Source: Octopus sinensis
Taxonomy: Eukaryota
DNA length: 64,000 bases
NCBI RefSeq assembly: GCF_006345805.1
Contig: NW_021833892.1
Location: forward strand, 124,001-188,000
Direction of reading: 5' to 3'
The notes under the pieces were generated by a model. The model made no database searches. It had not been told where the DNA came from and saw nothing but the letters and a program-made list of their open reading frames with translations. A program made the position numbers and the translations under genes. This document shows positions 23,601 through 61,982 of the stretch, piece by piece; position 1 is the first letter of the stretch; every line of letters begins with the position of its first letter.

Positions 23601-24480
23601 GAAATAATGGGCCACGAAGCGAAGCATTGTATTGTCTTTTGCAAGATCGAAACTTGTTCTTTGCATCCGCTGACTCATTATGCAATCATTGTAAGAAAAG
23701 CAAGAAAACTGTTGACCACATGGCTACTCAGTGTGGTAAAATGCTCAACAGTGATTATCTCCGGAGACACAACGAAGTTGTGAAGTGTATTCACCTTAAC
23801 TTGTGCCGAATGTATGGACTCAAAAAAGCAAGACGATTGAAGGGACATTCTGTTCAGTCAACACTGTCGACGGGAAAAGTTGAAATCAGGGTTGATTCTA
23901 CAATCCTCACCGAAACAAAAGTAGAATATAACAAGCCAGATATCTTTGTCCACGACAAAGTCAGAAACGAAATAAATCTAATTGAAGTGGGTATTACTTC
24001 ACAGGATCGCCTCAAGCAAGTGGAGGTTGAAAAGTGTCACAAGTATGACCTATTGGCAAGTGAGCTTTCGCTTCTGTATAGCTGTCAAGTAAAAATAATT
24101 CCTGTGGTTATGACATGGGATGGAGTTGTCTCGAAATGCTTCAAAAATTATATGAAGAAATATCTATTGAAGCAGGAACGAGGACATACATCCAATCCGT
24201 TGTACTGAAAAGAACGCTCGAGAGTATGATGATCGAACACAAGCACGGAATGAAGGTATCTGGTGAAGAATACGCTTCTGCTTCCAACCGGTATGTGGAG
24301 ATGGCATGCAAAAATGAAGACGACCCAATGAATGCTAAAGAAGATGCAATGGTTGAATCAGATGTGGTAGTGGGGAGTAAGAGGCAGCTGGAAGTAGACT
24401 CTTCTTCCAAGAGAAGGAGTGGATATCAGCGAGCTGGAGTGAGATCTGCTTAGTTTCTGATTAACTATTAAGTTATTATT
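20650..24480 (+). mobile_element. Near full-length R4/Dong-like non-LTR retrotransposon (RT, CCHC finger, restriction-like endonuclease) with about five frameshifts
   Basis: ORFs 20988, 20980, 21897, 22507, 22841 and 24115 join into one protein: PDWKACGCDG, LRPITCMPTLYK, WVDVKKAYDSVDH, GILQGDSLSPLLF, LLFIDDLK, YRYLG, CNHC..TVDHMATQC..RHNEVV, KPDIFVHD..LIEVGITS..EKCHKYDLL. Termini approximate. Confidence 0.93.
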
Positions 24481-24512
24481 TTTAAAACGGCTTAACCAAA
24501 TATAGTGAATTA

Positions 24513-28880: not shown

Positions 28881-28884
28881 TGGA

Positions 28885-29342
28885 CTCCTCAGCTCGTTGC
28901 ACCAAAAAAAAGGTTGAGAATCACTGCTATTCGGAAACCAAAAAAAAGGTTAAAAGTTTAAATATTCGGAAACATTATGAATCATTTCATTCAGAATTTT
29001 TTTCTAAATTTACGGGCCAAGAAAGAATTAATTAAGTTGAAAAATTCAAACGCAAATTTAAAAGTCAAACTTCATTTTTTCAAAAAAGTTATACCCTAAT
29101 TCATTCTTTCGGCCGTCACGACCTATGTACCTAATATCAATGAACTCTCGAACAATAAACGACAGTATATGAAAAATTAAAAATCAAATTCAATTAAAAT
29201 AAAATTTACTCGTTGTTTGGTTAAATAAAGTTTTACTCAATTAATTAATATTAGCCTTAAATAAGTAAAAAAATTATCTGGCCCGCAGACCAATAATTTT
29301 TTATGATCCGGCCCGTGAAATCGGAAATTCTGCCAACCCCTG
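28885..29342 (+). mobile_element. Two orphan hAT right ends: solo TIR 28912-28926 and a second end finishing at 29342
   Basis: aaaaaaggttgagaatcactg resembles the right end at 20075-20096; ggcccg subterminal motifs, then gccaacccctg followed by atctaaat (29343-29350). Confidence 0.6.
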
Positions 29343-31286: not shown

Positions 31287-32747
31287 CAGTGGGCGCAAAA
31301 AAAATCCGGTTTTCTTATTTTTCGAATTTTTCAATATAAATTTTATATTATTTTTTTTTAATTTAGTATCATTTTGAAATGTAAATCGAGTATGTTTTTA
31401 ATTTTAAGTATTTTTTTATTTTTCATAGAGATATCTTGAATTAATTTTAAAATGCGCAAAAAAAACTCGGTTTTTTTAATTATTGAGTCTTTTATTCTCA
31501 AAAATTTGAAATTGTTGTCATTTTTGTTGTTGTTGGATGTCGTGTATTTCAGAAATTGTGAAAGGACAAATTATTCAACTTTATTTCCTTAATTGGACAT
31601 ATAAACAAATTCAGAAGAAGTAGAAATTCCCAGATCAACAGTGGGAGATTACATACGTAAATACAAAAAATATGGAACAACACAGAGACTGTCCGGTTCT
31701 GGAAGACCTAGGACATTAAATAATGATGATATAAATACTTTATTGACGCTTGTTTCTGACAATCCGAAAAAATCTTCCCGTTGCCTGTCAAAGGATCTTC
31801 ATTCTTTGACAGGAAAAATCGTCTCAAAACGAACAATTGGGAATTATCTGAAACAAAAGGAAATATATTCACGTGTGTGTCAAAAAAACCGTATCTGTCT
31901 AAAATTAATATCGAAAAACGATATTCCTTGTCAAAAAAATTTATCGCACTGAATATGACGTCATGGAAATCAACTATTTTTAGTGATGAATGCTGTTTCG
32001 AAATTTTTAATCACAAAAAAAGGAATTTTGTTATAGGAAAAACAACACACGTCTAGAAAAATCGCACTTATCTCCAACTGTTAAATTTGGAGGGGGAAAA
32101 ATAATGGTGTGGGGATGTTTCGGGTATTATGGAGTAGGCAATCTAGTTTTATAAATGGAACTATGAACTCAGCAACTTATGTGAACATATTATCAAATAA
32201 TCTGTGGGAGTCCGCTGCGAAAATGTGCTTGAATGAATTCATATTCCAACAAGACATGGCTCCTCCACACACATCAAAGATCACGAAAGATTTCTTTGCC
32301 GAAAGAAGCGTCAAACTATTGGATTGGGCACCGCAATCGCCAGATTTAAATCCAATAGAACATCTTTGGGCATATATTAAAAGTAAATTGTACGAAAATC
32401 CTCCAAAAAATATGCATGAGCTGAAAGATAAAATTATAGAAATTGGGAAAATATGCCGAAAGATCTAATACAGAAACTCATAAACAGCATGCCGAGAAGG
32501 GTGTACGATGTTTTTATGGCTAAAGGACGGCATATAAATATTAATTTGACATTTTTTTAAAAAACCGGGTTTTTTTTGCGCATTGTAAATTTAAATTGGA
32601 AATATCTCTTGAAAAAAATAATGAAAATAATCAAAATAAAAAAATAAGAGTTACTTTTCACTAAAATTTAAGATTAAAAAAAATATTATATCGCACAATA
32701 TAAAAAAATAGAGAAATTAGAAAACCGGATTTTTTTTGCGCCCACTG
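31287..32747 (+). mobile_element. Tc1 (DD34E) DNA transposon with IR/DR-type ends; transposase frameshifted
   Basis: Ends cagtgggcgcaaaaaaaatccggttttct and its reverse complement, TA flanks; inner repeats at 31452-31477 and 32561-32583. GSGRPR, IFSDE, FQQD-34 aa-E (SPDLNPIEHLW). Confidence 0.95.
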
Positions 32748-34405: not shown

Positions 34406-35039
34406 TCTAAAAAAGTAATGAAACAAAAAATTAAATTAACAAAAGCAAGCACCAACAAGAAAGATATAACACGCTAGTCGCGTCCGTACTTTTCTCATTA
34501 TTTCATAAAAATAAAAATAACTTAATAAATTAACTATTAATTAAACAATATTAATGCTTTGACAACATAAAACATTATTAGTATTATTAATTTACACATC
34601 TCTAATAAAAAAATGCATTATTATAATCGTTATTTTAAGTTTTTTTGATATTAAATTATTATTTTTTAATTACTTCATTTTTTAAAAAAGCGAATCCACA
34701 GTAATAAGTTTAACCGAATATGTCGGAACGAGTATTTAAAAAATCAGTTTTTTTAGTGCGGTTTTTGAGAGAAACGTTTTGATTGTTCTTCCGAATTGAA
34801 AGTTATTTGTCAATGTCGACCCATCGAAATCACTGACATTGGGAAAACCGATATCACAATCAAGCCACATAAATTTGTTGAATTTAACAGTTTAAAAAGT
34901 TTTAACAAATAGAACCTTTTAGAAATGCTGCATTTTTAGATAGATTTCAAATGCAGGGTAATAAAAAACGATATTAAGGTTATTTCCGGTTATTTTAACT
35001 GGAAATGCTTTTTTGTTGTTACATAACTTCAGACACACA

Positions 35040-36110
35040 TCGGTGACCAGATTTTAAAGGACATTGGGGGAGTGAACAACAAATTTACTGCGGATAAAGA
35101 AAATGACCGATACAGCGGAAAAGGTGATCGGTTGAATGGTCAACACAGCAAAGGTTACAGAAAAGAGAAATTGAGTCGCGGAAGGGTCCGTATTGACAAT
35201 ACTACTTCAAGATCAAGACTACTGCCCAATGGTGTCCCACAAGGCTCCCTTCTATCTCCTCTCCTTTTTAACCTATTTCTACATGACCTACCCATTACTA
35301 ATGACCCGGACATTATGTTCTTATTCTATGCGGACGACCTGATTATCCCAGCAAGAGAAATCTCTTTCTGTGGCTGTCGCAATGGTCCAGTCACACCTCA
35401 ACCGTGTATGTGATTGGCTATCTGCAAACATGTTGTGTGTGTCTGCATCTAAATCCCAATTCACCCTCTTTACTACTGATAGAAGATTCAAGAATGGACT
35501 GGAACTATTCATTGGAGACAATCCTATTTCCTCCTCGCGTACCCAGAAGATCCTTGGCGTGGTTTTCGACTCCTTAATGACGTTCTCAAGTCACGTAGAG
35601 GAGGCCCTAACTAAAGATCTTCGAAAGTGGAACGTCTTGAAAGCGCTGTTAAAGAAGAGTCCCTTCCCCTGAAAGATTGTGTCAGCAAGGTCTACCAACA
35701 AGTGATTGCCCCGACGGTTGAATATGCCTGCTCAGCCTGGAGGTTTGCAATTGCTTGTTCGAAAGCGGAACGTTTGAACTCACTCAGAATGAAGATTATG
35801 CTCCACACTGACACCTCAGTTGGCAGCCTTGCTTCCGAGGAGGCGACGCAGAAGAATGGACAAGGTTTCCTACGTTTCTGCAAGGAACTGGGAAACCCAC
35901 TAAAGGAAAAGGTGGCCCATGCAGAGGAATTTCGGTCGGTTATAAAGAAATGCACTCCAATTGAGTTCCTCTGCAGAAGGAAGAGAAGGCGTTTCCTAAT
36001 TACGGTCGTGTCATTAGAAGATCATGTAAGGAGAGTACGGCTGTTGTTGGGGGCAGGGATCACCTAATTAGTAGTTCTGACCTATCTTTCTCGGTGATCT
36101 TGGAGTTAAT
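35040..36110 (+). mobile_element. 5'-truncated LINE RT fragment with frameshifts
   Basis: GVPQGSLLSPLLFNLFLHDLP..FYADD, KILGVVFDSLMTF, PTVEYACSAW. Confidence 0.88.
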
Positions 36111-36179
36111 AAATAAATTATGTGAGCGTAGTGGTTTAAGAAAATGATGATTTCTATTAAGAATTAATTTAATGATTCT

Positions 36180-38960
36180 TCGCTCGTAAGCCCATCAGAT
36201 GCAGATAACTTCCTTGAACTGCGCCTGCAGCCTCACTCGGGGAATTGGCTAAACGCTCTCTCGTTGGGTCCAACGGTCTACTTTTAGAGAACGAGGCTCT
36301 TCCGACTCATCGACTCTCATTTCTGGCGACAGGGGGACTAAAAATTTCGTGTTCAGAGTGTGCCTTTTTTCCTGAAAACCTTCGGTTTAACAAAGCCCTT
36401 AGCATTGATCTAGAGAGAATTGATGACTTGATGGGAGAAATGTGCTATTGTAATATTCAGAGAATTGTTTTTTGCATTGGTCTTGAACTTGATATATGCC
36501 AACCGTACTGTTGTCAATGTTCATGATCCTTTCAAACGGATTACACTCCTTGTCTTGTAAGAAGAGTGCTGGCCGATATCCACACCATGATCTATTCCAG
36601 TGGTTCTTAACCTTTATTTTTGTATCGCCCCCTTGGAATTTTTTTCGCCCCTCCAATTTTTATATCGCCCCCTTATTTCATTAGTAAAAATTTTTATTTA
36701 AAAATAAGAGTTTTAATGAGATCCTTGTGGTTGATGAAGATTGACAAGTTTTTCAAAATTTGTACTTCTTTTCGTAAGTGTAATTCTAATGTCGCCTCTT
36801 TCTTCTATATTTAGTTTGTTTCTTTTTTTCCGATCTTACTATTCAGAGTGCTGAATCCTCTCTCTACGCAGTATGACGTAGGAAAACCTAATATTATTGG
36901 CATCATTTTTTCCCATAATTTCGGGAATTTCATTTTTATAGATTTTTCTCCCCAGAATTGTGTCAGGTTTTCATTTTTAAATTTTATTTTCAGTTTTTCG
37001 TCGTTTTTTAGTTCTATTAATTCTTCTTGACATTCATCATCAGAATCATAATGAATGGGCAACCAAGGATTAATCATCCAATCAGAAAAGTTTAAATTAA
37101 TTAAATCTTTAATCTTTTTTCAAATCTTGTTCCAAAGATTCTAAATGAAATTCATAAATTTTCAGATCGTTGTCATCAAAAGTGTGGTCATAAAAATCGA
37201 ATTTTCCAAATTTTCTATTACTTAAATTAAATTTGTAACATTGAATTTTTTCAATGAATGTATTTATAATTCGTTTGCAATTAATTAAATTAACATAATC
37301 TCCTTTTTTGCAATTAAATGATGCCGATGTAAAATACAATTGAATTGAAGTGGACATTGGAGATTTTTGTTTTAGAAAAGCTAAAAAAACCACAATATTT
37401 TCCAACCATAGCCATTGCGCCATCAGTTGCGCACGATAAAATATGTTCAATTGGAATATCATTTAAGAATAAATAAGATTCAAACATTTTGAATATTGAC
37501 AATCCTGCAGTATCCGTGACTAAAGATTTTGCAAATAATAACTCTTCTTGCAAAATAGAATCATCATCGAAATATCTTTATAAAAAGTATTTATAAAAGT
37601 AATACCTTACATATGCCATTAAAATTGACTGGTTATCAACGACAACTGATTTGTCAAGTTGGACTGAAAACTTGCGTTCTCTGAGAAGTAAAATTAAGGA
37701 TTGTTCAATTTCTTCTTCGTATAGTGTCGTTGCTTAATAAAATAGTCTTCATAATATTTGAAGAATCTTTTTGTAAAATAAATAAATTTAAGCAAAAACG
37801 GATGACATTTTCTGCAATCGAATCGGCATTACCTATAATCTAAAATAATAATGCAACCAGTTTTTGCGATTATCCCTGCAAATTTATATGAATAAGATAA
37901 TCCAGAGACATTTTGAAATCTATTTTTATTAAAGATTGACGGTAAGGTGTTTTTATTTTCAAAATTATTTTTTAATTCTAGAAAAAAGTCTGGCTTTTTT
38001 CCAATTGAATTATGATGTTTTCGCTTTAAATGTTCAATCAAACGAGACGGTTTCATTGCCTCATTCGAAAAAATTGTACCACATTGAAGACAAAGTGGTT
38101 TAATAGGATCTTGAGGATCTTTAATAAATCCAAGAGAAATATATTCATCTTTATACATTCTGACTTTTTTTTGAACACGACCCATAAAGATAACTAGAAA
38201 TCACGCTTAGAAATTTAAATAAAATTTTATTATATGAACTAATTAAAATGGGGAATAAGTTATACACGAATTAATAAAGAGCCTGGAGGTCAGCTCAAAG
38301 TAGCCGCACTGGGTATCGAGTGGCAGTTTCCGCGGAGCACTGCGACCGAGATTCGCTGGAAGAGCCAGCTCGTCTCCCTCCGGTTTAAATAAAATATAAT
38401 AAAAATATCATATTATTAGACTCGATTATATATCTTTATTTTTTCAAAGATTATCGACTTCTAACATAAGATTTTAATTTTTCAAATATTAGCAATCAGC
38501 CATCGCCCCCCTGGCAAAAAAAATCGCCCCTAGGGGGCGAATCGCCCACCGTTGAGAACCACTGATCTATTCAATGAAGTGATTAAGAGGGCTCTTGATT
38601 CCGTCTATACTGGAACCGGTTGGTCTCTTTCGGGGTAATAGAAAACGTCCCGACGAAATAACGACATTCCTATTCAGTAGGTCTCTCGTTTGTGACCTGC
38701 GTGGATTCCCTGTCGGAGACGTTGTTGTCCATGACGACATGTTTGCCAGGCTATGCTTGCGGAAGGAAAGAAAATGTTGAAATACGCTAATTCTTCCGAG
38801 GCTTATGACTTCGTGCCCCTCGCCTTCGAGACCACGGTAAAGAAACTGAGAAGTTGCTATAAAAATCACATTGAAGACCAATTACCGGAGGGGACTTCCA
38901 GCGCGTCTTAGTCTCAATTCTCCGTGGAAACTGCCTCTCGATTTGCAGTGCGTCGTCGGA
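36180..38960 (+). mobile_element. Degraded CRE-like retroelement remnant (36180-36597 and 38565-38960) split by a hAT insertion and by the 36298-36440 repeat
   Basis: PHSGNWLNAL, then GLHSLSCKKSAGRYPHHDLF / NEVIKRALIPSILEPVGL..KRPD reads across the hAT; matches the 48655-49764 protein. Confidence 0.85.
36598..38564 (-). mobile_element. hAT (Charlie/Buster-like) transposon with decayed transposase
   Basis: TIRs cagtggttcttaacc / cgttgagaaccactg; 8-bp TSD atctattc (36590-36597, 38565-38572). BED finger CLQCGTIFSNEAMKPSRLIEH, FSVQLD, ATDGAMAMVG, FPTSYCVERGFS. Confidence 0.95.
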
Positions 38961-39693: not shown

Positions 39694-41414
39694 TTAGCAC
39701 TGATAGACATGATGATCAGAAATAAACACACGTTTATAATAATTAATACTAAAACCAATTCTTTCAGTGCATTCTTGAGGAGTTTCGCCATCTTTTTGTT
39801 TCCATTTTGGTTTTTTTCTCATTGAATTTATTTTGTCGATGGTTGAAGTAGAAAGCGTATCTATTATGTCATCATTTCTACACTACCAAAACGAACTTTG
39901 ACTTTCCCAGTCGTGCCAAAGGGGTCCTCCACTACCCCATCTTCCCCACTTGTCAGCTTTCCACGGAAAGAAATGAAATTATCCATAAAATCAGACTTTC
40001 TAGTAAACAGCCCATTGCAAATAATCGTTTTTTGATCCTCACAAACTCTCTCGGCCCAACCATTCTTTGTTTTGCGTCTCAAAACCTTAAGTCTTTGATC
40101 GACCTGATCTCCACTTCCACAAAGTATTTGTCCGCTGAGTGCAATACGACATTTTAGGTCATGTCCAGACTCGAAATTAAAACCAATCAGAAAGGCTGAC
40201 TCATAGTAGAGTGTAGTGGAGGTCCCAAAGTCCATCAGACAGTAAAACTGATCCCCCGATGTGACTTGTTCCAAATATTGATAGCTCATATCAAAATTAA
40301 ATGAAAGGCCTGGATTTTCGTCCATAATTTTTGAGGATGTAAAAAAATGGAGAGTTGCTGGATGGATTTGGTTGATGACTGCCACATGAAGATGGCACTT
40401 TGAGAAAAGAGGTCGTTTATAATATGAAAGAGGAGAAACAAGAGCAATAAGATAACGGGACCTTCTGACTAGAGAAGGTGGCCAACATACGAGACCTCTT
40501 TCAATACTTTTTGAGTTGACATTCGGCAGGCAAATTGCTGCCCTGTCACCCTGGAATGAAAAATGTAATTACTTGACAAATCGAGTTAATTGGCTGCCCA
40601 AACGACTGCATAGACACAATTTTTCTGACAATATTTAAAGAAGAGACGTTCACGTTTAAACCGGTTTTCCGACATCCCGAGAGAACTGTGCCTGTTAGGA
40701 CAGTCCCTCGTCCTTTGACAGTAAAACAGTGATCGATGGCCATCAAAAAGTCATCTCTGTCACGACATATAGTCGGCTCAGCCATGTTGTCCATCAAATC
40801 GATCAGTTGGTCTATTCCAATAAACTATAAACAATTGCAGTGGATTTATCTACATTTCCAACATTATTTTTCTTTACAAGGGAAACAGCCACGATCGGAC
40901 ATTGCCTGAACTTGTTTTCTTGATAATTTTCTCCAATTTTGATTTCATCTACAACTTGATGATACACTAAAACTGTGGAAATTGCCTCTTGACAAGCTTC
41001 AGTGATAATGTCGATTTTGTTAAGTACAATTATCAATTTTTGGCATGTCAATTCTGCCAGAATAAGACACTCTGCAGTCTGTGGTTGAATTCCCTTAGTA
41101 ATGTCGATCACCAAAATACAAATACTGATTATGGAAGACCCTGAGGGATGGTAATGTTATAGAATACCACATATGATAGTTTTAAGCAAAGATGCGTGTC
41201 CAGGACAGTCAACTAATGTAAACTGTCGGGTATGTGATCCCTCGATATTTGAAGGACAGAAAAGCCAAGATCAAGGGTTATACCTCGTTCCTTGCTTTGT
41301 GGATTCTTATCAAACGCTGCCGTACTTCCTTTGGTACTCAGAACTTTGCAGAGTGTCGTCTTCCCACAATCAACATGGCCGAGGATCCCCACACCTTACA
41401 TTAAAACTGGCCAT
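39694..41414 (-). CDS. EEFSEC: Selenocysteine-specific elongation factor eEFSec, with apparent frame defects near the 5' end (possible pseudogene)
   Basis: GILGHVDCGKT, STAAFDKNPQSKERGITLDLGF, TLVDCPGHASL, VIDITKGIQPQTAECL, VLNKID, AIDHCFTVKGRGTVLTGT, QGDRA, ERGL, DPFGTTGKVK; C-terminal KRVF; stop at 39694-39696. Confidence 0.9.
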
Positions 41415-43813: not shown

Positions 43814-46800
43814 ATGTCGAGAATATGTTCTTCTCTCTGCAAGCATTGAATGTTGTTACATCGTAATGTTCAACTCCTGTGGGGCTAATCATTCCATTCT
43901 AAACAGCCGACCTGCCTTTTATTCCGGTTGAATGTGACAGGACTGACCTAAGTGGTTGGGAACCACTTTGTTCAACATTTTCCACAAATTCAAAAAATGC
44001 GTTCTTTGGGGCCATTTCGACTGCTTTTAGCAAAATTCATATTTTGTGATTCCTCTGTAAGTGTGAATCTAAATCTGGTGTTTTGAATGAATAAATTTAA
44101 GAATCGTCGCTGCTTTCTGAGTCTTTTAAAGTCGGGATCTCTTTTTATGTGGATCTGTGTTGGTCGACGTCGTATTTTCGAAGGATTTCTAATTTGGTCA
44201 CCTCCAGGTCCTCAAATCGGTCAATTATCCCTTCGGCCTGCCTGTTTATGAATTAAATGGACAAGATTACTTTGCCTGTCTCCACGATGGACAAATCGAG
44301 ATCTGGGAATGCTCCACCGTTGGTCATTTGTCAATAAATTTAAAAGAAGGGGAGACTTGTGGCGAGTTGTAATATATTTGACCTACTGGTGAGTCCGCTG
44401 AGCACTCAGGGGACTCTGAGAACAATTTCCTCGTCAAATCCAGAGGACATAATTCAATAAATGTGAACTATTTGTCCAAGTACGTCTAAAGTCGTCATAT
44501 TGTGTAATATTTTGTTTATTCAATCATTTCGGTAGGTGGCTGCCTTTATGTTATTTTTGGATGAAAATGTCAGTTTAAATTTCGATCGAAGGATCAGTGA
44601 GACACATGTATTTTTGAATTGTCTCATTTTTATAGAACCCTTGTTTATCTATAGTCTCTACTCGTGATTATTACGTACTGATGACTGGAAGTGTTGATCA
44701 TAAAAGTATTGAATTGGTAAGAAGGTAGTGCTTGTTGTATATTGAATATTAGAGAAAATGACTATCCCTGTACTGTAGTGAGTGACAGTCGGTCAGCCCA
44801 TTCAGAGTTGGTGTGTAATGTTATTGGGGATGATGCGAATGATTTGTGTTTAATGGCATTTAATAGTTTTCGTCGGGCACTGAAATCATTCTCTCTTGAC
44901 ACAATCCGTCGATCTATTCTGGTAGCAGTGATTTTGAGGAATGCGTTGTAGTTGGAGGTTGAATGTGGTGGACTTTGTTTTAACGTTGGGAATATTGAGG
45001 CAATGGACTATGCTCAGCTGACAGATTTATGTTCTAAGCTAATTTATGAAAAGGTTATTGTTGTGGAATAAGTTTTAGATTGGCTCTCATGGGGTAGTTG
45101 AGGGGGAAGAGGACTTGTATTTAGAAAACACACATTTTGCAGATATAAAAGCATTTTATTCCACGTGTTTGCTTTGTGATCAACAGGTAGCTTTTGATGA
45201 TTAAATTAAGGAACATAATTTAATTTCCTTTGACTGCATGGAGGATTCCAACGAATTAGTGCTTCTCTCGAAGGTTAGACCTAATTTAAAGGACAGTAGA
45301 GCGGATTGTCATTTCTTGTGAGAAATGTTGGTCAGAATTTGTGCTTTCAGCAGTCTTTTCCAGCCTCTCATGTTGGGGCTGAATTATTCCCTGATTCCGA
45401 AGAGTTAACTTCTCAAATCCTGATTGAAGGATTACGATTAGTAGATTCCGCTGTCATGCACAGCATCGGTTCCTCCACTTTTGACAATTTTATGTTTAAA
45501 TTTATCAAGAATTACTTTAACTGTAAGATACTTGACTCAATTGATCTGTTGAGTCGAATTATCAAAGAAAATCTGTAAAATGAGTGAAATATTTTTAGTA
45601 ATTCACGGGATTATGCAGTACTTGTGAGTCTTTTGTCAAATATGAGTGTCTCTCTGTTGTCGAACTCAATAAAACAACTCGAGGATTTCAGGTTCCCACA
45701 AAAAGAAGATGGTTTTGTGTTTTGTACATAAAATAGTGAGAAAATGCGGAAAATGTGAGATTTCCTCACTCGGTTTGGAGTATTTGACAAAACAATTCCA
45801 ATTATATGTCAGTTCCCACCGCAGATATGTTCGATCCCTCTTCATTCTTTGTTCAATGAGTGGAAATCTACAAGTTTGGCTAGGTTTTACGAATTATTTG
45901 CAGTTTTTGGAAGATGATATGAAAACTTATTTAATCAATCATATTTTGAACTTTTATTGCATTGATTTCTCACTTGGAGCTGCTTGTCTGCCGTCTAACA
46001 AGCTTCCTGATTGCTTGTTTGTACAATAATGATTTAATTCTCCTATTAGTGGACGTATTGACTCATTATACCACGAATATGCCACAATTCACTTCAATTT
46101 TAACAAAAAATATAGTCCAGAACTGAAACTGGTGGCACTGATTTTGGAAAACGGGGTGGAGTTGTGTCAGAATGACTTGAACGTCTGCTCTCAGTCTGAC
46201 ATGTTCGACTCTTTACTGAATCTATGGGGAAATGAGTTTCTTAGTCTGTTTGGGCTGCTGTTGTTTGAGAGCGGATGTCTGAGTGCTGTCGTTGAATATT
46301 CGAATACTCTATCCACGTCTCAGAGACAGATTCCTCCCACACTTTTATTTATCACCTGTCTTGCCAATCTGTATTTTATTTTCATTACAACAAATTTAGA
46401 GTGCTAAATGATGGATGTCTGGGTAGGACATTTAAAATGATTGGAGGAAAAGAGTTTATGAACGAATTGTCTGTGTTTTTTAAATTTTCCAATTGGGAAG
46501 AATATAATTTAATGGTATTATTACAATTTCAAATTGAGGTTGTCACTGCCATGTCTTTGTGTAAAAGACATGAATTGGTCTCCGACTATTGTGAGGATAT
46601 ATTCCAATTCGGGCCATATCCGGATGAATTTGTAGTCAAAGTTGATGTATTGTAGATTCCATTTCTTTTTGACGCCTATCTGCACATCGAACAGTATACC
46701 ACAGCCATTCTACTTCTTGCTGCCTCTAATATTCAGTTCGTATCATATTTGAATATATATAGACCTAAAACCGACCTGATTGCTTCATTTTTGGATTACA

Positions 46801-48247
46801 TTGAAGAACATTATAAATATGAAGTAATGGACACAATTCCTTTGAATTCTCTGAGTATTCAGGTTGAGTGTTTGGCTAAATTGGCCAAGATATTCGATTC
46901 GATGACAGGGAGATTGGCAGGTGTCGACTATTCTAATTTGCTGTACTTTTCGCTCCGCACTATTTCATTTGGAAATAGAATCTATCAATTCCAGAGTGGT
47001 TATTGGTTCATAAATCACGATTCAATAGTGGCTCAAGTTGCCTACAACAGTAGCAGGAAACTTATCAAGCACGACAAAGCTGAATTTGAGGGACCTTGTA
47101 GACTCATGGAGGAAGCATTGAAGGCTTTGGCAAGTCTGCCTGAATATGATCAGTTTATTGTCTGTAACGAAGACACGTGTTTATGTTCACTCGACTTGGT
47201 TGATTTGTATGTTTTATTTAAGCGTATTGCCAATGAACATATTCGCGTGTCGGGCGAGGGAATTGTTCGACTAAAACCAACAAATCTGATTTTGGTAGAT
47301 AGGAAACGGATTGAAGCCGAACTGTTGATTTTGAAGTCAAAAAGAACTCTTTCAGATCTCGATCTGTCAATATCGACTTCAGAGAAAGCCGAAGATTTGA
47401 TTCCAGTCCTTTGCATAGCTGGGCTTTATGACGAAGCATTTCAAGTCACTTCTTATTATTCTATTTCGAATGTGGACATTATTGATAGTTTACTCAAAAG
47501 GTATGCAATGTCAGGGAAATTGGTTAGATGTGTCGAATCAAAGTCCGTCGTCAAAATGAGTCCTGATTTATATCTAGAAAATTCTAAATGGATTCTTCAA
47601 ATTCCATTTTTTGAAACATTTGAGTCAAAAAAGTGTCAAATGATTATTTTATTTGCTTTAGTTACGTCGATTCGTGTATTACTGTTCTGCAGACTCTGCT
47701 TCTCAAATACGACGACACGGATTCTTTCAATCTACACAGACTTTCTATAAATTACTTCTTAAAACATGGAACGTTGCCTCCATTATGCCTGGAGACTCAA
47801 TATATGGTATAATCCTGGATTGGGTTATTCCAGAGCGTATTTCCTGTGTCTCTCCTTCGTATTTATGTCGATAACGAGTTTTATGAACGTGCGGCTGAAT
47901 TGATAATCGAAATGTGCAGAGCATGTTTGGGGGAGGGAGAGAACCCAACTCGATTTGGTGTTAAAGTAAGAAGTGATGTGTATTTGCTTAGAATTGCCTG
48001 CTTTTCAAAGATTCAGAAGTTTGTTTCCCATATTCAGCAGTCGAGGAGTTTTTGTCGCTAATTGGGAGTTTACAGAATAAGGGTCGACTTGATAAAGAAG
48101 TATCATGTGCCATTTGTGTTGTAGTTATTGTCGGAGTTGTCCGAGGAACTTGTTTATTACATGGACACTGTTGAGAAGACGTCGCAGGACATGCAGTATT
48201 ATAGAAAATGGAAATTCAAGTTAAAACAAGATCATTCTTTTGAGTGA
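43814..48247 (+). CDS. NUP160: Nucleoporin Nup160, many mini-introns; start approximate
   Basis: ALKALASLPEYDQFI, AEDLIPVLCIAGLYDEAFQV and FLKHGTLPP..SLLRIYVDNEFYERAAELIIEMCRACLGEG follow the Nup160 C-terminal pattern; stop TGA at 48245-48247. Confidence 0.8.
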
Positions 48248-48611: not shown

Positions 48612-50560
48612 TTTTTTTTTTTTTTTTTTTTTATATGTAATTAACAAATAGTTATTAACTAACTAAATTCCCGGCATCGTAAATGGAAACACAGTTTCCA
48701 CGTACTATGGCCAAGGAAATCCTTTCGAAAAGCCACTTGGACTCGCGTGGGTCTCCCCGTTTATGGGAGATCATGCGGCCAAGCTTTTTTAGAAAGGAAA
48801 GAGACTTTTCGCCGATGACGCCGGAAGTCTCGACGGCGATGGGAGTGAACAGATACCGTTCAGAGAGCTCCTTGTACTTTCCAATCTTCATCTTCTCGGT
48901 TTTGCGAGAGACTGAGCCAGGCTCGACAGCTGAAGAAGGAAGGTTGAGCTCCGAGAAAGTGTCTGAACACGTCGCATCCCATAACAGAGACTTGCCGAAC
49001 TCAAACGGGAAAGTCGATAGGCCGTCGGGTCTTTTTCCGTCTCCCCTCGCAAGCCCAACGGGTTCGAGGATTGATGGGATCCCAGCGGCCGTGAGCCCCC
49101 TCTGAATAACGTCGTTAAGTGCTGCATGGCGTGGTGCGCGCCCTGCACTGCGACGACAGGAAAGGGGATGTAGACCAAAACGGTCAATGACAGCACCACA
49201 ACGACATTTGTGTATTTCGCAGATTTCCAATCCAAGACGCAATGATAAACCAATTCGTAGGCAATCTTTGTCTAGTAGGTTACCGGTGGAAGGGACAGGG
49301 AGAGCATCCAGCCAGGCCCCACTCCCTGTGCAGCAGCCTGCGCGGAGACATGCAAGTCTGTGCTGATCGAAATTTTTGCGTAGATGTACGTCAAGAGCTT
49401 CACAAGAAATGGCATCCCATTGAGCTTGGATACACGGGTCACTGGGTCTTTTGTTGTACAATGAATCCCAAAAGTCCAGAGCGGCCACGTGATCAACTGA
49501 CATTTTTCGTTCGGGAAGGTTTCTGAGAACGATGTCAGTGAGGGCACGGGATGATGCCAGGGACGAGAGGAAGGCAGGAAGAGCCAGATAAACGGGCGAA
49601 CGAAGGCCAATCCCCCCGAGATTAACAGGCAGGGAAGATTGAAGCCACCCCAGAGCGTCGAAATGGATGTTACACAGATACTCGGCTCCAGACTTCAAGA
49701 TAGAATCGATATCGGATAACAGATTAGGCATGCGAAAACAAGGAGAACTCCTTAGGGTGTACAAAAGCCTCGGAGTTGAGAAATAGTTACGCAGAAGAAA
49801 GAACCCGACGTGGAAATTACATTATTTTCTAAATTTTATATAAAGTGGTCTTGGTGTTTTAATAAAATAAATCAATCAAAAACTACAAGGTTAAAATTGT
49901 TTTGCATTGATGTGGCGGGAAAATCTCAGGCGTATTCAGAAGAGGAAAAGAAAACAGAGTTGACAAAATTAGTGGAATCGGACAACGATGATAGATAGCA
50001 TGGCAAGGATAAATCTCTGCAAGACGGATATCGATGCCCCCGCAACGATTAGGTAAATTGCCACGTAGTATGTCACCAGGTTTGAATATGATATTCACCA
50101 GCAACTCGGGGGTTTTGAAACCAAATTATAAAGACGAGATAGATGTTCTTGCTTGAGAAAGAAAGGCGATGAGTGCATAAGGAAAGTAAGTTTCGGAATA
50201 AAAAATAGTTCTTCATTAGGAAAAGCTCCAGATGAGATTCAAGTTTGCAGATACGTAAGATAAGGATTTCTATTTCTTTTTTGTGGTCACTGAGAGCCTT
50301 TCTAATCTCCTTGCTACTGATTTGGGAACCAAGGCAGCTCAGATTTCGAACCGTTAAGGACAAGCCCAATAAAAGCAAACCCAAAAATAATTTTGTGGAA
50401 ATCGCTTCGCTTCCTAAAGAAGCTTGGACGCTTAGCCACATTAAAAAGCCACGACACACGTGAGACCCGGTGGCTTTTCCAGTTGATCTCCGTTGCTATC
50501 GTGAGAGGCAACGCAACGTCAATTATGTTGGCGGGGTCCACTTCGGACCGGTAAAATTTT
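48612..50560 (-). mobile_element. CRE-clade-like REL retroelement with poly(A) tail; RT core deleted, 3' 369-codon frame open
   Basis: T21 at 48612-48632. QSSLPVNLGGIGL, GAWLDALP, CRCG..GLHPLSC..RHAALND, RPDG, WDATCSDT, KIGKY, PIAVETSG. An AT-rich ~110-bp segment at 49810-49920 replaces the RT core. Confidence 0.9.
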
Positions 50561-53365: not shown

Positions 53366-56300
53366 ATGCAGGCCGAAATTGAAGATAACTTATTTGAATT
53401 ATCTCCATCTGATTTTTGCTTTCATATTTCTCGTAAATTTTTGCCGATTTACATTTCAGGAATTGATAATCATGAACACCAAGAAATGATTTCGTATTTC
53501 AAATCATCTTTATTTAATTCAAGCCACAATTCTGATATAAACCGGAATATTTTTGCATTTATTTGTTTCAAAAACTTGAATATTATGAATCAAATATGTA
53601 CTGTTTTGGCAAATCATGTTGATAAATGGGACACATTCGACGTACCACTGAATGGCGACGAAGCCAATAAAATAATGATTTTAACAGTTAATATAATGAC
53701 GGGAATTGTAATTAATTCAACCGATGAATTTGTCACAGATGTGTTGTATTCTATAGTAAGTAACTACTATAAGTATTTCAGTTTAATATTCAAGCTAAAT
53801 TAGCTTCACATTGCTGTCTTGCCCCTAAATATGAAATGATTTTTCGGACTATGTTAAAATCCCAGTTTACTCAGATTTTCTCTCTGGTTTTATATTTAAA
53901 ATTATTTTTTAGCACAACTCTCCAAAAATTCTCAGCATCAGTATTTTAAGGACATTGTGCAATATGTTCAAAGACGATCTAGGAATTCTTTACTTGATCA
54001 GTCATTTTTGCTCCGTCGCTTCTAATCATCTTCCCACTGAGTCCCAGGTGGGTCATTTATGATTAATTTTAGACTTTAATAGCCGAGTTATTGAGCCATA
54101 AAGTATTTACTATGCAAAAGCTGTTTTCAAAGCCTTCATATCGTATTTTGGTAGCAAACTGTGTCATTTTATTTATAGAATGGGCTGAAGCATGTAATAT
54201 CAATTGTTGGCCGAGATCTCATCTCATCTGTTGTGTTCCCTGCAGTTTTAAGTATGCTAAAGAGATTATGTTAGTTTTTAGTGTCGTTGGCGGAGGAATG
54301 GTGTACGATAAGGAATTCCTCATTTCTCTATCCACTCAATTTATTGGTTGGACATTTTATTTAAACCTGTAGAAAACATGAAGAGTTATCCAACGAACAA
54401 GGAAATGTCAACTAGTGCCCTCGCTGTGCTGTACTCGGCTGGATTTGACGACGAAACAGCCATGTCTCTTTTGACGATGCTGACTAAAAGTCATTTCAAG
54501 TTGCTATAAACCAGGCCTGAAAAATTTGTCGGATGTCAGCAGCAAAGAAAATGTTTTGCTCGCAATATCTCTATTTTCTAAATTAAGGACCCCGACTATC
54601 AAATTATGTGCTCATGTGTTTGACACTCTTCTCCCTCTTCTCATGACTACAAGTAACTCATTACTTTTATATTGTCAGCTTCTCCACGTATTACTGCCGG
54701 TCTTATGGCAGTATTTACTAACTGGACTACAGTTCTTCCCCAAAATGTCAATACTTCTGGTCTAATTCCGACCTTAATCTTCATTATTTGTAGTCTATAA
54801 ATAGACTGATTGTTTAGCCAACACCAAGTTATTCAACTCTCCTGGTTTTTCATCTGTTTTTGTGCGTCTGTCGTTGCATTTATTGCGCAATGATGGTAGG
54901 TTTTTTTGAATATTCTGGATAGGTCGCGACAGAGAATTGACTTCTCGATGTGTTGAGTCTGTCCAGAGTTATATGGAGAAATGCACAACTGAAAAATGTC
55001 CTCAACAAAAATTACTTTCCTTGGCTTATTTGATTACGTAATTAAATTGTAGTGACTGTATAGTACGATTGTGCCCAGTCCGGAACAAGTAAAGAGTTTA
55101 ATTAAAAAATGTAATTTGTTTACTGACAGAGCTCTTGCGTGTTACAATTCTGAAGGTTTTTATTGCCTTGTTAAAGCCAGATTTGACCATTGCTTATAAA
55201 ATGGGATTGCTGTGGGCGGAATTGGATAGTCTGGAGAGAAGGTTGCTTGTATTTATTACTGGCAGTTCTCGCTGTCGTTTTGTTGTTTTGGTAATTTGTC
55301 ACCGCCTTGTTGAAGTCAGTAAACTTTGCGTTGAAATACCCGAATTGTGCATTTCAGAGCTGCTTAATCAGGCCTGTCTTTTTATTGACAACGTGAAAGG
55401 CATTTCGGCATTGCTTTTTGTATTTTGAATTATTTAGACTTTATTGTCGTCCCATTGCATGTTGAAACCATCGCGAATGAGGTTGATTTTTAAGATTATA
55501 TTCTCCCAAATTAAGAAAGATGATATTCCTTCTTTTCTCAAGACTGTGATTCTTTCGCTGACTTGTCCACTAATCTGTTCTTTTATATTTTTATTGTTTT
55601 AGATAATCCGGGCTTTTTATTGTCGAATTTCGATTTTTCTGTATTTTCAGTCGACGAATATCTCACTTTAATATCAAATAATATCAATTCGGAGGCTGTG
55701 GTGAACCTTTGCGACTTATTGTCGAGAATAAAAAATGTACGAATCGCTCTTTCTTCTCTCCTATTGGACTGTTTGTATTTTGTTAATGAAGAAATTATTG
55801 CGTCTACTGTGAGTCTGTCTGATTGTCAAGTGATGGATTCGGCCAAAGTCGGAGATTTGCACGACGTGGGAATGCTTGAAATGTTTGCGTATTTTGGATA
55901 TTTTAGGTTTAATGAAGTAAACAAGAAAATTTCTAAATCAAGAATTGACGAGGTTTGATGAATTTGTTACCCTTGTGCTTAGGATACGTTCAAATGCAGT
56001 TTCATGGGAATTTCCATCACGGAAACGCAATTGTTGAAAATTAAAGACAAATTGGCGGAAGAAGCAGAATTAGCCAACAAACTCCACTCAGTATTAAGCA
56101 TTTATATTGGCTTAGATGGTTGATAGATCTTCGTGGTTTTTTAAAATAATGGAAAAGGTGAATTCTTCTTACACAACGCCACAAAACTTTGTTTTTTTAC
56201 TCAGACATTGTGACCGTCTTCTCAAGGACAACTTAATTTACGATGTCGGGATTAGCTGACTCATTCTCTGGTCAAATATGCATTCCCTGCTTTGTCGGAT

Positions 56301-59300: not shown

Positions 59301-61982
59301 TTCAGTTCATTTGGTTGTACCTCATATTCAAAAGTCAATGTTTCATGTTGATAAACTTGTACGTAAGTGGTCTGTCCATCTCATCGGACAACTGTTTTGT
59401 CAACTAATTGGTTTCCCTGCTTGTATATTGTGTTAGGAGTGACTGTCTCGACTGACGAAGAGAGCATGGAGATAGTTCGCACAAGTGATGCCAACATTGC
59501 CGTTTGTTAACCTTCTTTAACTTTTAGACTATTCGTACTATATTTGGTGATGATATGTTTGGTCGCGTTCTATCGATTCTATATATTAATCGATTTGATT
59601 CTTCCAATCACGTTTGCCAAGTCTCCGTTCGTGTATGGAAAATTATTGCAACAAACAGCATGAAGACTGTTGCGATCATTTTGGGAGTTTTTTGTCGATT
59701 GGTTCTAGACGTTGTTTCCAATGATCAGTTTGCTCATGTTCATAATGTTTATTTCACATTTTCACATCTTTGTTTAGGCGGCTTTGTCGGCTCTGGCTGA
59801 TATTTGCAGAAAATTCGGCTCGAGAAGATATGAAGAGATTATTGATAAATTATTACCAGAGAGTCTTTGTGAGAACACTCGATTACATGCTGCATTCCAT
59901 GTGGCAATGGGATATATTCTCTCTTCCTTAAATAGAGAACAGGCCGTGTTTATGGCGACTAAATACTCCGACTTTCTCATCTTTGGATTGAAGGATTCTG
60001 CGGAAGTAGTTCGACAAAGTGCTTTTGAGGCATTGCAAAAGTTTTACACTACTTCGGGCAACTTAGCTCTAGAAACTATTTTACCAAGACTTTCCCGATT
60101 TGCCGTTTTATTTGATTCAGATTAATTTTTAGTCAAAAGATAAACAAATCTGCAAAGTACTTGGACTAGTCTGCCAGTTCAAACAATCTGTCTTTTCCCA
60201 GTTCATAATTCCTCTTGTATGTAATATTTTATATTATTTAGTTTTGCGACCAAACTCTAGATTTGGAAGGATTAGTCTGCCTGTCTTTGAATACGGTGAT
60301 TTATTTGGGATCGGAATGTCGACGAATAATGGAAAGGATTGTTTTTGGTTTGTTAGAACGTGATGACATCCTCTTGGTGTTATATATTTGTTTAGTTTTA
60401 GGAAATTACTCGATATGAACATTTTCTGATTAATATTGGCGACAAAGAGAGTTGTGGGAATGTGATAAACTTCATTGTCGACAAGTTGGTCAATCAGACC
60501 ACTACTCGACGACTTATCGCAGCACAATTTTTGGGATTTGTGTGTCAGTGTGCTAATTTCGACTCTTCGCAATTTCCAGTATTTCAAGCATTATTTGAAC
60601 TTCTTTGTGATTCCGACGTTCAATTGCAACATGTCGCGTGGAATTCAATGGATTTGTTTATTAAGACATGTTTCTCTCATTTATTCACAGAACATAGATC
60701 CCGATGTATTCAACCAGTCTTTCAAGAGTATTCGTGGTGTAGTGGACGGAATATTACTTAAGTGTCCTTAATCTGTCATTCACGGGTTTGGTCTCCCCGA
60801 TAAGAGAATTCGATGTTTCGCTTCCATTTTCTGAAATGGGCTTTGTGCAGGAATAAAGAGGATTGCACTGCAGTTTTGCTTGCAATTTTGGTGAAATGTC
60901 CTCCTGGGGCACTTGATTCTTCCGCTATGTCTATAGTTGGGGCACTTATTCGAGCACTGATACACAATCAGTCTTTGCTTACTAAATTAAATTGTTTGTC
61001 TCTCATACGTGAGTTTATTTACCGGGCTGGCAAGTGCCTTTTGCCATTTGCTTCCCAATTCCGTGTTACGTTTTGTGCCACAATTCTCGATGTTAATTTG
61101 AAGGTGAGGGAACTGTCGGTTGAGTGCATTCGGGAAGCTGTGATTTTTGATGGAAATCCCGGTGTTTATGCGGAGAGATTGATGGGCGCTTATTTAGAGC
61201 AGACAAATAGTGGAATACGGTGTTTCCATTGGTTTATATTTTGTAGAGCTTCCATAATTGGGTGGACTGTGTTGTGTTTTTGAATTTTCGAGTAAACCAT
61301 TCTCATTTGATTCTCTGTCGTTCATTAGGGAGCATCTTCTTTCGTATGAAAATGACCCTAATCCTGTCACTTTACAACTGGCCGCAAAGTGTATGGGGTT
61401 GTCATTTTTCTTGATTTCTGATGTGGAGTTTGAGAGTGCGACGGGTCTTTATTTTTTGAGTATTTAAGAAATATTTTAATTTCTAGATTCTGAGTTCGGT
61501 GAGTTTCGTTTACATGCGTTCCAATGGGCTTTGTATTCTAACATTGAAAGGATGAAACCGTTTATTCATCGAGTTGTTACTAAATTGAACAGTCTTTCTG
61601 TAATTTCTGAGGTTTTTATTGCTCTTATACTTTGTAGAAATGTGCTGTCATCGTCTTGGAAATAATTTGTATTATAGTCAGAAATTACACTGATTCCGAA
61701 ATTCTCACGTTTGTTTTTTCGCTAGTTCGGAGAGTAATGGATTGTTAATGTTTATTTTAGAATCTTGAATCGACTTATTTGTTAATTAGAGAGAAGATGT
61801 TGGATGTGGTTCTTGATATGATTGAACGAATTCGTCTTTTAATCAACTGTGATGATATTCTGTCTCTTGCTGTTCGACTGGGGAATGATGAAAATGAGCG
61901 TGTTGCGTCTAAAGCAAGATTATTAGTGGCAACACTTTCTTCAGATAAAATAACATTTCAAAATGTTAATAATTCCATCTAG
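53366..61982 (+). CDS. GCN1: GCN1 (eIF2-alpha kinase activator, HEAT repeats), dozens of mini-introns; start approximate
   Basis: IMGSLAHHLD..LSTPSQMVQENIARCLP, KYAERRGFAFGLAGLCKG, FEPY..LPNLL..GD..NVR, SSHGMKQILPKLLEAL..SWRT, FVHAIDSPSLSII. Introns checked at 57.7-58.5 kb keep the frame. Confidence 0.92.

What the first reader, a model, noticed from the sequence alone, without database searches (positions are those of the whole stretch)
40900..41414. eEFSec has three frame defects in its GTPase domain: decaying selenocysteine machinery, or record-short introns
Seen: (1) ATG GCC AGT TTT AAT is out of frame with GTG GGG ATC (VGILGH) because of 7 extra nt (41393-41399); the ATG frame stops after 14 codons. 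(2) DLGFS is out of frame with QFTLVDCPGH (41226-41257). (3) Splicing the 25-nt segment 40949-40973 gives the family-like MKSKLEKIIKKT but is then one base short before KFRQCP (~40915); retaining the segment keeps the frame. GT-AG segments of only 13 nt (41395-41407) and 17 nt (41241-41257) would repair (1) and (2) but delete conserved-looking residues. Ran, RhoGAP, ATP-c, SNAPIN, BCL7, the protocadherin and the checked parts of GCN1 show no such defects. Established: eEFSec is essential for Sec insertion and is lost with the Sec pathway in some lineages. Inference: recent pseudogenisation, splicing below the known animal size limit, or local assembly error.
Basis: partly seen in the sequence, partly recalled or inferred. 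Interest (0 to 1): 0.72.

Follow-up and report, generated by a model that had tools for sequence, protein, structure and literature searches.

The report
Frame breaks in a parasite eEFSec gene
The selenocysteine elongation-factor gene does carry three one-base frame breaks, but they look most like uncorrected long-read assembly errors in a dicyemid parasite contig hidden inside an octopus genome assembly, not gene decay or record-short introns.

Summary
The gene at 41414-39694 (minus strand) is a genuine eEFSec. It matches human eEFSec at E=1e-94 and carries the Pfam eEFSec_4th domain.

All three reported frame breaks are real. Each is repaired best by a single-base change: drop one base at 41399-41392, add one at 41245-41229, and add one at about 40918-40911 after splicing a normal 25-nt intron. 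These readings beat the as-assembled reading (13-nt and 17-nt introns, 25-nt segment retained) by 11 and 17 bits on family profiles.

The proposed 13- and 17-nt introns fall outside the local intron range, where 60 of 65 are 22-33 nt. The 17-nt one is also compositionally exon-like. About 45% of random one-base indels in this window's exons can be "repaired" by a 10-20-nt GT-AG segment, so the GT-AG ends prove little.

The rest of the gene is intact, with five GT-AG introns of 22-29 nt.

GCN1 in the same window shows two further probable ±1 breaks. The contig belongs to the PacBio Octopus sinensis assembly but has dicyemid gene structure.

Estimated probabilities:
- Consensus indel errors: about 0.6
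- Real recent inactivation: about 0.25
- Ultra-short introns: about 0.04

Read mapping would settle it.

The parts
39694..41414 (-). eEFSec gene, from the ATG at 41414 to the TAA at 39696-39694. Six exons; about 530 aa once the three frame breaks are bridged.
   Evidence: Human eEFSec 5izk E=1e-94. Best database homologues are eEFSec at 34-41% identity. Pfam GTP_EFTU 108.7 bits and eEFSec_4th 71.1 bits. The C-terminal exon aligns with the family.
41392..41399 (-). Break E1: one base too many in GTAAGGTG, between MASFN and VGILGH.
   Evidence: Dropping one base gives MASFNVSVGILGH, against the family consensus LNFNVGVLGH. That reading scores about 5 bits above the 13-nt-intron reading.
41395..41407 (-). 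Candidate 13-nt GT-AG segment GTTTTAATGTAAG. Probably coding sequence, not an intron.
   Evidence: It is AT-rich, but at 13 nt it is far below the local 22-33 nt range. It would leave only MAS before VGILGH, shorter than in all 120 homologues.
41229..41245 (-). Break E2: one base missing between ...DLGFSVLQI (frame 0) and RQFTLVDCPGH (frame 2). GGG and CCC runs lie in this stretch.
   Evidence: The indel reading leaves a 16-aa spacer; the family range is 19-40 aa (one 4-aa outlier excluded, probably a mis-annotated model). It scores 6 bits above the 17-nt-intron reading and 11.6 bits above the 35-nt one.
41241..41257 (-). Candidate 17-nt GT-AG segment GTCCTTCAAATATCGAG. It encodes the family-like strand VLQIS.
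   Evidence: GC 0.41, T 0.29, splice-motif score -3.2. Accepted introns have GC 0.27±0.08, T 0.47±0.10 and motif score 1.6±1.6. Removing it leaves a 10-aa spacer.
41141..41167 (-). Intron 1, 27 nt, GT-AG.
   Evidence: Joins TIICG to SSIISICILVID in frame, matching human TIIGGAQIIDLMMLVID.
40949..40973 (-). Intron 2, 25 nt, GTTTTAGTGTATCATCAAGTTGTAG.
   Evidence: Modal length, with GTT...TAG ends. The spliced reading is gapless against the family and 17 bits better than retention.
40911..40921 (-). Break E3: one base missing in the A-rich stretch AAGAAAACAAG, just before KFRQCP.
   Evidence: MKSKLEKIIKKT|KFRQCPIVAV aligns with the profile consensus lkkklkktlektkfkdapivav only if one base is added here.
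40825..40853 (-). Intron 3, 29 nt, GT-AG.
40551..40572 (-). Intron 4, 22 nt, GT-AG.
39861..39886 (-). Intron 5, 26 nt, GT-AG. It joins GKVKVRF to the C-terminal exon.
   Evidence: The exon ERIGFSINYYKRVFISDHHVYQC aligns with the family's ...LTFKRYVFDP..K..Q.
56254..56255 (+). GCN1 break G1: probably one base missing between ...LIYDVGI and LTHSLVKYAFPALSDAE.
   Evidence: Frameshift-aware parse. The codon score of the downstream 17-codon piece lies in the top 1.5% of stop-free intergenic windows. The alternatives are an 11-nt GT-AG segment or an 83-nt 'intron' whose sequence looks GC-rich next to normal introns (my reading of the sequence).
60854..60854 (+). GCN1 break G2: probably one base too many in CAGGAATAAAGAGG, between ...SEMGFVQE and KEDCTAVLLAILVKCPPGAL.
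   Evidence: The frameshift reading aligns colinearly with Chaetomium GCN1 (8i9x_LR) at 17.4 bits. The 16-nt-intron reading scores 12.9 bits. The 123-nt-intron reading scores 15.4 bits but aligns only over residues 3-83.

Best explanation
The locus is a structurally complete eEFSec gene of a dicyemid parasite. Its contig was co-assembled into the PacBio genome assembly of its host, Octopus sinensis.

The three frame breaks in the GTPase-domain exons are most likely single-base consensus errors that polishing did not correct. One is an extra base and two are missing bases, and all lie in or next to short homopolymer runs.

In the living animal the gene would then read as one open frame of about 530 codons with five ordinary 22-29-nt introns.

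Shown: the breaks, their ±1 nature, the better fit of the repaired readings, the intact remainder of the gene, similar probable breaks in GCN1, and the source record. Inferred: that the indels arose in assembly and not in the animal.
For: (a) Every break is bridged best by ±1 base.
- N-terminal profile of 224 homologues: 144 bits for the ±1 readings, 133 for the 13+17-nt introns, 127.5 for 13+35.
- Mid-domain profile of 89 homologues: 135.2 against 118.2 bits.
- Pfam GTP_EFTU: 108.7 against 101.6 bits.
The out-of-frame pieces therefore still encode family-like peptide.

(b) The remainder of the gene is intact. The P-loop, DCPGH and NKID motifs are present, five GT-AG introns are kept, there is no stop codon, and the eEFSec-specific domain IV is present.

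(c) GCN1 (about 2,500 aa, about 40 normal introns) in the same window has two probable ±1 breaks. That makes roughly 5 breaks in about 16 kb of host coding sequence. All five breaks are indels and none is a nonsense codon. From general knowledge, indels are the typical error of long-read consensus.

(d) Source. An exact-protein look-up places the window on VCDQ01003741.1 of GCA_006345805.1. That record is the O. sinensis assembly made with PacBio sequencing and Hi-C. O. sinensis hosts Dicyema japonicum. The 25-26-nt modal introns here are dicyemid-like.

(e) A GT-AG 'repair' is expected by chance for 44-48% of random one-base indels in this window's exons.
Against: - No reads, transcripts or dicyemid orthologues could be reached, so the errors are inferred, not seen.
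- Three breaks in about 490 nt is far denser than the window average. The Poisson probability is about 0.01 for this gene at the GCN1-derived rate, so errors would have to cluster locally.
- The GCN1 breaks rest on weak homology (E about 0.02) and on codon scores.
- I do not know the coverage or polishing history of this contig.
Confidence: 0.6

Rival explanations
1. The frameshifts are real. eEFSec has very recently been inactivated in this dicyemid, either as a unitary pseudogene or as a null allele in the parasite population, as part of losing selenocysteine decoding.
For: - As assembled, no functional protein can be made.
- The density of breaks in the 5' third exceeds the window's background.
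- The protein departs from 39 of 152 columns that are at least 95% conserved in 120 homologues, against a maximum of 12 for any homologue. That is compatible with relaxed constraint.
- From general knowledge, several parasite, insect and nematode lineages have lost the Sec pathway.
Against: - There is no nonsense codon, no broken splice site and no lost catalytic motif in about 1.6 kb.
- Under neutral decay three indels should not all fall in the first 30% of the gene.
- GCN1 would have to be decaying in the same way.
- The divergence at conserved columns fits the generally fast evolution of dicyemid proteins (PMC2222250).
Confidence: 0.25
2. The assembled sequence is correct and the gene is functional. 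A 13-nt intron (41407-41395) and a 17-nt intron (41257-41241) are spliced, and the 25-nt segment is retained in frame. That would put splicing below the 15-16 nt known from Stentor.
For: - Both segments have GT-AG ends, and removing them yields an open 528-codon frame.
- The 13-nt segment is AT-rich like local introns.
- GCN1 holds an intron-like 18-nt GT-AG segment at 55420-55437.
- All four breaks other than E3 have a GT-AG option of 11-17 nt. For E3 the in-frame alternative is to retain the 25-nt segment.
Against: - 60 of 65 host-gene introns here are 22-33 nt. cDNA-verified Dicyema introns measure 26.2±1.9 nt.
- The 17-nt segment has a GTC donor and a GAG acceptor, GC 0.41, and a motif score 3 SD below the mean.
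- This reading loses 11+17 bits against family profiles. It gives a 10-aa hairpin spacer where the family has 19-40 aa.
- Chance GT-AG repair occurs at 44-48% per site.
- It requires a perfectly normal 25-nt intron to go unspliced.
Confidence: 0.04
3. The breaks are real but bypassed at the RNA or ribosome level, by programmed +1/-1 frameshifting or transcript slippage.
For: One GCN1 site (GAA TAA A at 60854) superficially resembles the stop-codon +1 sites of Euplotes. This is my own knowledge, not tested here.
Against: I saw no classical X XXY YYZ slippery heptamer on reading the -1 sites (E2, E3, G1); I did not run a formal scan. E1 has no stop at the shift point. No such system is known in animals.
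Confidence: 0.02

Closest known systems
Human eEFSec (PDB 5izk/5izl/5izm, 7zjw)
   Same: EF-Tu-like GTPase domain, domains II-III and the eEFSec-specific C-terminal domain IV. E=1e-94; Pfam eEFSec_4th 71 bits.
   Different: Only about 35-40% identical. The switch-I hairpin spacer is shorter (16 aa against 19-40). 39 of 152 conserved columns are changed. As assembled, the frame is interrupted three times.
Residual single-base indels in long-read consensus assemblies
   Same: Only ±1 changes, each in or beside a short homopolymer. No nonsense codons. They affect unrelated conserved genes (eEFSec, GCN1) on a contig from a PacBio assembly.
   Different: Not verified against reads. Three errors within 490 nt is a denser cluster than the rest of the window shows.
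Loss of the selenocysteine machinery in some animal lineages (insects, some nematodes; own knowledge)
   Same: eEFSec would be one of the genes expected to decay.
   Different: Nothing here points to pathway loss. The gene has no lesion other than the ±1 breaks. The rest of the genome could not be searched.
Ultra-short spliceosomal introns (Dicyema about 26 nt; myxobolids 22-27 nt; Stentor 15-16 nt; PMC13644364, PMC2222250)
   Same: The five accepted introns of this gene (22-29 nt) and 60 of 65 in neighbouring genes belong to this class.
   Different: The proposed 13- and 17-nt segments lie below the local range. The 17-nt one does not share the T-rich composition, and the GTA/GTT and TAG/CAG end preferences are only partly met: the 13-nt segment has a GTT start but an AAG end, the 17-nt one GTC and GAG.

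Membership tests
eEFSec (selenocysteine-specific elongation factor) | EF-Tu-type GTPase domain with G1 (GHxDxGKT), G3 (DxPGH) and G4 (NKxD) motifs | tested here: met
   GHVDCGKT, DCPGH and NKID are present. Pfam GTP_EFTU scores 108.7 bits on the bridged reading.
eEFSec (selenocysteine-specific elongation factor) | eEFSec-specific C-terminal domain IV | tested here: met
   PF21131 eEFSec_4th, 71.1 bits against a cut-off of 27. The alignment to human eEFSec runs through residue 499 of the query and the C-terminus aligns with the family.
eEFSec (selenocysteine-specific elongation factor) | Uninterrupted reading frame in the genome after removing introns | tested here: not met
   Three ±1 breaks in the assembled sequence. 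Whether they exist in the organism is untested.
eEFSec (selenocysteine-specific elongation factor) | Binds Sec-tRNA(Sec) and works with SECISBP2 and SECIS | not testable with these tools
   No tRNA and no Rfam family (SECIS included) was found in the window. The rest of the genome is out of reach.
Spliceosomal intron (applied to the 13- and 17-nt segments) | GT...AG termini | tested here: met
   But 44-48% of random one-base indels in local exons offer such a segment by chance.
Spliceosomal intron (applied to the 13- and 17-nt segments) | Length and composition within the genome's intron population | tested here: not met
   The local range is 22-33 nt for 60 of 65 introns. The 17-nt segment is GC-rich and T-poor with a motif score of -3.2. 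The 13-nt segment has intron-like composition but not intron-like length.
Spliceosomal intron (applied to the 13- and 17-nt segments) | Removal yields the family-consistent protein | tested here: not met
   Removal costs 5 and 6 bits compared with the ±1 readings and shortens a conserved hairpin to 10 aa.
Spliceosomal intron (applied to the 13- and 17-nt segments) | Spliced junction seen in transcripts | not testable with these tools
   No same-species protein or transcript product is in the searchable collections.
Unitary pseudogene | Disabling lesions confirmed in the organism's DNA | not testable with these tools
   Only one assembled copy is available.
Unitary pseudogene | Signs of neutral decay beyond the first lesions (stops, lost splice sites, lost motifs) | tested here: not met
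   None in about 1.6 kb. The high divergence at conserved columns is ambiguous, because dicyemid proteins are generally fast-evolving.

The most novel reading that the evidence does not exclude
The assembled bases are right and this dicyemid splices GT-AG introns of 11-18 nt. These would be the 13- and 17-nt segments in eEFSec, the 11- and 16-nt segments in GCN1, and an intron-like 18-nt segment in GCN1. That would be shorter than any intron known in animals and, at 13 nt, shorter than the Stentor record.
Probability: 0.04. Interest if true: 0.85.

Novelty: not a real feature. Interest (0 to 1): 0.22.

Why it matters
If the breaks are assembly errors, the practical lessons are about curation. 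A 421-kb contig filed under Octopus sinensis is really dicyemid DNA. Frame defects on such by-catch contigs should not be read as biology.

It also means dicyemids probably keep a working eEFSec, and so selenocysteine decoding, which the searched literature does not address.

If instead the breaks are real, this would be a newly caught loss of the Sec machinery in another parasitic animal phylum.

If the tiny segments are spliced, the lower size limit of spliceosomal introns would have to be revised.

Tried and rejected
- **Upstream first exon.** I looked for one that would enter the P-loop exon through the AG at 41396-41395. The only upstream ATG ORF with a donor (41530, donor at 41492) is in the wrong phase (manual reading).
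- **A 35-nt canonical-size intron for break 2** (41257-41223). It leaves DLGFS|FTLVDCPGH with a 4-aa spacer, scores 11.6 bits worse, and is GC-rich.
- **An 11-nt GT-AG segment for break 2** (GTTTACATTAG). It deletes the conserved FTLV.
- **Dismissing break 3.** I first treated it as a non-defect because the unspliced reading is in frame. The profile test reversed that.
- **My own exon/intron parser.** With a flat intron model it produced many spurious 10-19-nt introns. Those I inspected (11 and 16 nt in GCN1) were nested inside normal 25-29-nt introns.
- **Searches for same-species or dicyemid eEFSec.** Full-length query, N-terminal query, exon 5 against 1.84 billion representatives, and exact look-ups all found nothing closer than 41%, 71% and 36% identity.
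- **GCN1 C-terminal homologue search.** No hit at E<=0.001. Pfam was uninformative at the GCN1 break sites. The GCN1 N-terminal region gave no PDB alignment.
- **Gene calls on the source contig.** They are sparse: only the cadherin-like ORF.
- **The Nup160 5' exons** (41.5-44.2 kb). They could not be modelled well enough to look for more breaks next to the eEFSec 5' end.

Full report
**What is there**

On the minus strand, from the ATG at 41414 to the TAA at 39696-39694, lies a gene whose conceptual product is a selenocysteine-specific elongation factor.
- It matches human eEFSec (PDB 5izk) at E=1e-94 over the GTPase domain, domains II-III and domain IV.
- The best hits among 5.8 billion proteins are annotated eEFSec at 34-41% identity.
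- Pfam finds GTP_EFTU (108.7 bits) and the diagnostic eEFSec_4th domain (71.1 bits).
- The gene has five GT-AG introns of 27, 25, 29, 22 and 26 nt.

**Check of the observation**

All three frame breaks are present.
- E1: the ATG frame reads MASFNVRCGDPRPC and then stops. VGILGHVDCGKT... is in another frame, which a TAA closes at 41397-41395.
- E2: ...GITLDLGFS and QFTLVDCPGH are in different frames, and the switch must occur between 41257 and 41226.
- E3: I first discounted this break because the unspliced reading stays open. A profile built from 89 homologues changed that. Splicing the 25-nt segment 40973-40949 and adding one base in the A-rich stretch at 40921-40911 gives QEAISTMKSKLEKIIKKTKFRQCPIVAV. 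That is gapless against the family at 135.2 bits. The unspliced reading needs a 7-8-residue insertion and scores 118.2 bits. The segment itself has the modal length and GTT...TAG ends.

**What kind of lesion**

Each break is bridged best by a single-base change.
- At E1, dropping one base of GTAAGGTG gives MASFNVSVGILGH. In 119 of the 120 homologues the sequence just before G-x-LGH follows the pattern N-x-N-[VIL]; the commonest form is LNFNVGVLGH.
- At E2, adding one base gives DLGFSVLQISRDHIPxRQFTLVDCPGH. The spacer is 16 residues. The family range is 19-40, setting aside one 4-residue outlier that looks like a mis-annotated model. The 17-nt intron leaves 10 residues and the 35-nt alternative leaves 4.
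- On a profile of 224 N-terminal homologue segments, the ±1 readings score 144 bits, the 13+17-nt intron reading 133, and 13+35 scores 127.5.
- With E3 included, the sequence read as correct and functional costs about 28 bits compared with three ±1 corrections. Pfam's general EF-Tu model agrees: 108.7 against 101.6 bits.

The out-of-frame pieces therefore still encode family-like peptide. The indels are either very recent or not real.

**Are the 13- and 17-nt segments introns?**

I built a small exon/intron parser and trained it on the window.
- In host genes (GCN1, Nup160, RhoGAP, Ran and a cadherin-like gene), 60 of 65 predicted introns are 22-33 nt, with a mode of 25-26.
- Accepted introns are T-rich (T 0.47±0.10, GC 0.27±0.08). 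They prefer GTT or GTA at the start and TAG at the end.
- Published cDNA-verified Dicyema introns measure 26.2±1.9 nt (PMC2222250). Median values of 27 nt are reported for Dicyema sp. (PMC6543705). D. japonicum is one of only two animal lineages with introns below 30 nt (PMC13644364).
- The 17-nt segment has a GTC start, a GAG end, GC 0.41 and a motif score about 3 SD below the mean. The 35-nt alternative is even more exon-like. Only the 13-nt segment has intron-like composition.
- GT-AG ends are weak evidence. When I put random one-base indels into real exons of this window, 44-48% could be "repaired" by a stop-free GT-AG segment of 10-20 nt.
- Several tiny introns from my first parser runs turned out to be nested inside ordinary 25-29-nt introns.

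**Is the defect specific to eEFSec?**

No. A frameshift-aware parse of GCN1 (about 2,500 codons, about 40 ordinary introns) needs two ±1 corrections unless atypical GC-rich "introns" of 65-137 nt are accepted.
- At 56254, the downstream piece LTHSLVKYAFPALSDAE has a codon score in the top 1.5% of stop-free intergenic windows.
- At 60854, the frameshift reading ...LPFSEMGFVQE|KEDCTAVLLAILVKCPPGAL aligns colinearly with Chaetomium GCN1 (PDB 8i9x_LR) at 17.4 bits. A 16-nt-intron reading scores 12.9 bits. The 123-nt-intron reading scores 15.4 bits but aligns only over residues 3-83.

These two cases are weaker than the eEFSec ones. If accepted, they give about five ±1 breaks and no nonsense codon in about 16 kb of conserved host coding sequence. 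Ran, RhoGAP, the modelled part of Nup160 and the cadherin-like ORF show none.

**Provenance**

- An exact-sequence look-up of the cadherin-like ORF (4281-5861) places the window on contig VCDQ01003741.1 (421,444 bp) of GCA_006345805.1.
- That accession is the Octopus sinensis assembly of Li et al. 2020, made with PacBio sequencing and Hi-C.
- The 25-26-nt introns, GC of about 35% and abundant LINE ORFs fit a dicyemid. D. japonicum has GC 36.7% and 49% repeats.
- O. sinensis is the host from which D. japonicum was sequenced.

The window is therefore almost certainly parasite DNA carried into the host assembly. From general knowledge, long-read consensus leaves mainly single-base indels at homopolymers, and more of them where coverage or short-read polishing is poor. 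I could not check either for this contig.

**Weighing the explanations**

- **Assembly error (about 0.6).** It explains the ±1 nature of the breaks, the lack of any other lesion, the GCN1 breaks and the source. Its weakness is density: three breaks in about 490 nt is well above the window average, so errors would have to be locally clustered.
- **Real, very recent inactivation (about 0.25).** It explains the density in this gene. It does not explain why all three lesions sit in the first third, why no stop, splice-site or motif lesion has appeared, or why GCN1 looks similar. The 39 of 152 deviations at conserved columns fit the generally fast evolution of dicyemid proteins as well as they fit relaxed constraint.
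- **Tiny introns plus retention of a normal intron (about 0.04).** Disfavoured on the grounds given above.
- **Recoding (about 0.02).** Disfavoured: I saw no slippery heptamer at the -1 sites, E1 has no stop at the shift point, and no such system is known in animals.

**Limits**

No reads, transcripts or dicyemid orthologues were reachable. The window holds no tRNA and no Rfam match, SECIS included. The state of the Sec pathway in this organism is unknown, and the searched literature does not address it.

**Verdict**

Read mapping at three named sites would settle it.

Noticed in passing
whole window (record VCDQ01003741.1, about 124,001-188,000, of GCA_006345805.1): The window is filed under the Octopus sinensis PacBio/Hi-C assembly. 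Its genes have 25-26-nt introns, GC of about 35% and many LINE ORFs, which is dicyemid-like. The 421-kb contig looks like renal-sac parasite DNA left in the host assembly.
   Followed up: partly
55420-55437 (+), in GCN1: GTATTTTGAATTATTTAG is an 18-nt in-frame GT-AG segment with two stop codons. Its composition is strongly intron-like (GC 0.17, T 0.56, motif score above the mean). The only alternative is a 45-nt intron starting at 55393 with an exon-like 5' half. If spliced, it would be shorter than the 20-27-nt size classes analysed in PMC13644364.
   Followed up: partly
56254 and 60854 (+), in GCN1 (53366-61982): Two probable ±1 frame breaks in an otherwise intact gene of about 2,500 codons and about 40 introns. 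GT-AG options of 11 and 16 nt exist but are GC-rich. They are used here as evidence that frame breaks are not specific to eEFSec.
   Followed up: partly
44257-48247 (+): A large gene with 18 short introns is Nup160 (Pfam TPR_Nup160_C, 87.7 bits). Its N-terminal exons, expected between about 42.2 and 44.2 kb next to the eEFSec 5' end, could not be modelled.
   Followed up: partly
1-2599 (-), 20872-25164 (+), 27455-29035 (+), 31452-32468 (+), 34720-36526 (+), 36811-38185 (-), 48655-49764 (-): Transposon-derived ORFs fill much of the window. They include a LINE reverse transcriptase (RVT_1, 102 bits), an endonuclease (Exo_endo_phos), and what look like Tc1/mariner-like and hAT-like ORFs (classified by eye, not by a domain hit). 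Most need one to four frameshift corrections in my parse. Whether that is decay or assembly error is not resolved.
   Followed up: no
39694-41414 (-): As assembled, the breaks cancel. E1 (+1) and E2 (-1) return the ATG frame at QFTLVDCPGH. Retaining the 25-nt intron (+1) cancels E3 (-1). The intervening frame has stops, so this looks like coincidence, but it can fool ORF-based checks.
   Followed up: yes
9511-10296 (+): The Ran gene is intact, with four introns of 35, 29, 25 and 28 nt plus a 24-nt one near the 3' end. Its protein looks far more diverged from human Ran than is usual among animals (judged by eye, from a remembered human sequence). That fits the fast evolution reported for dicyemid proteins.
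   Followed up: partly
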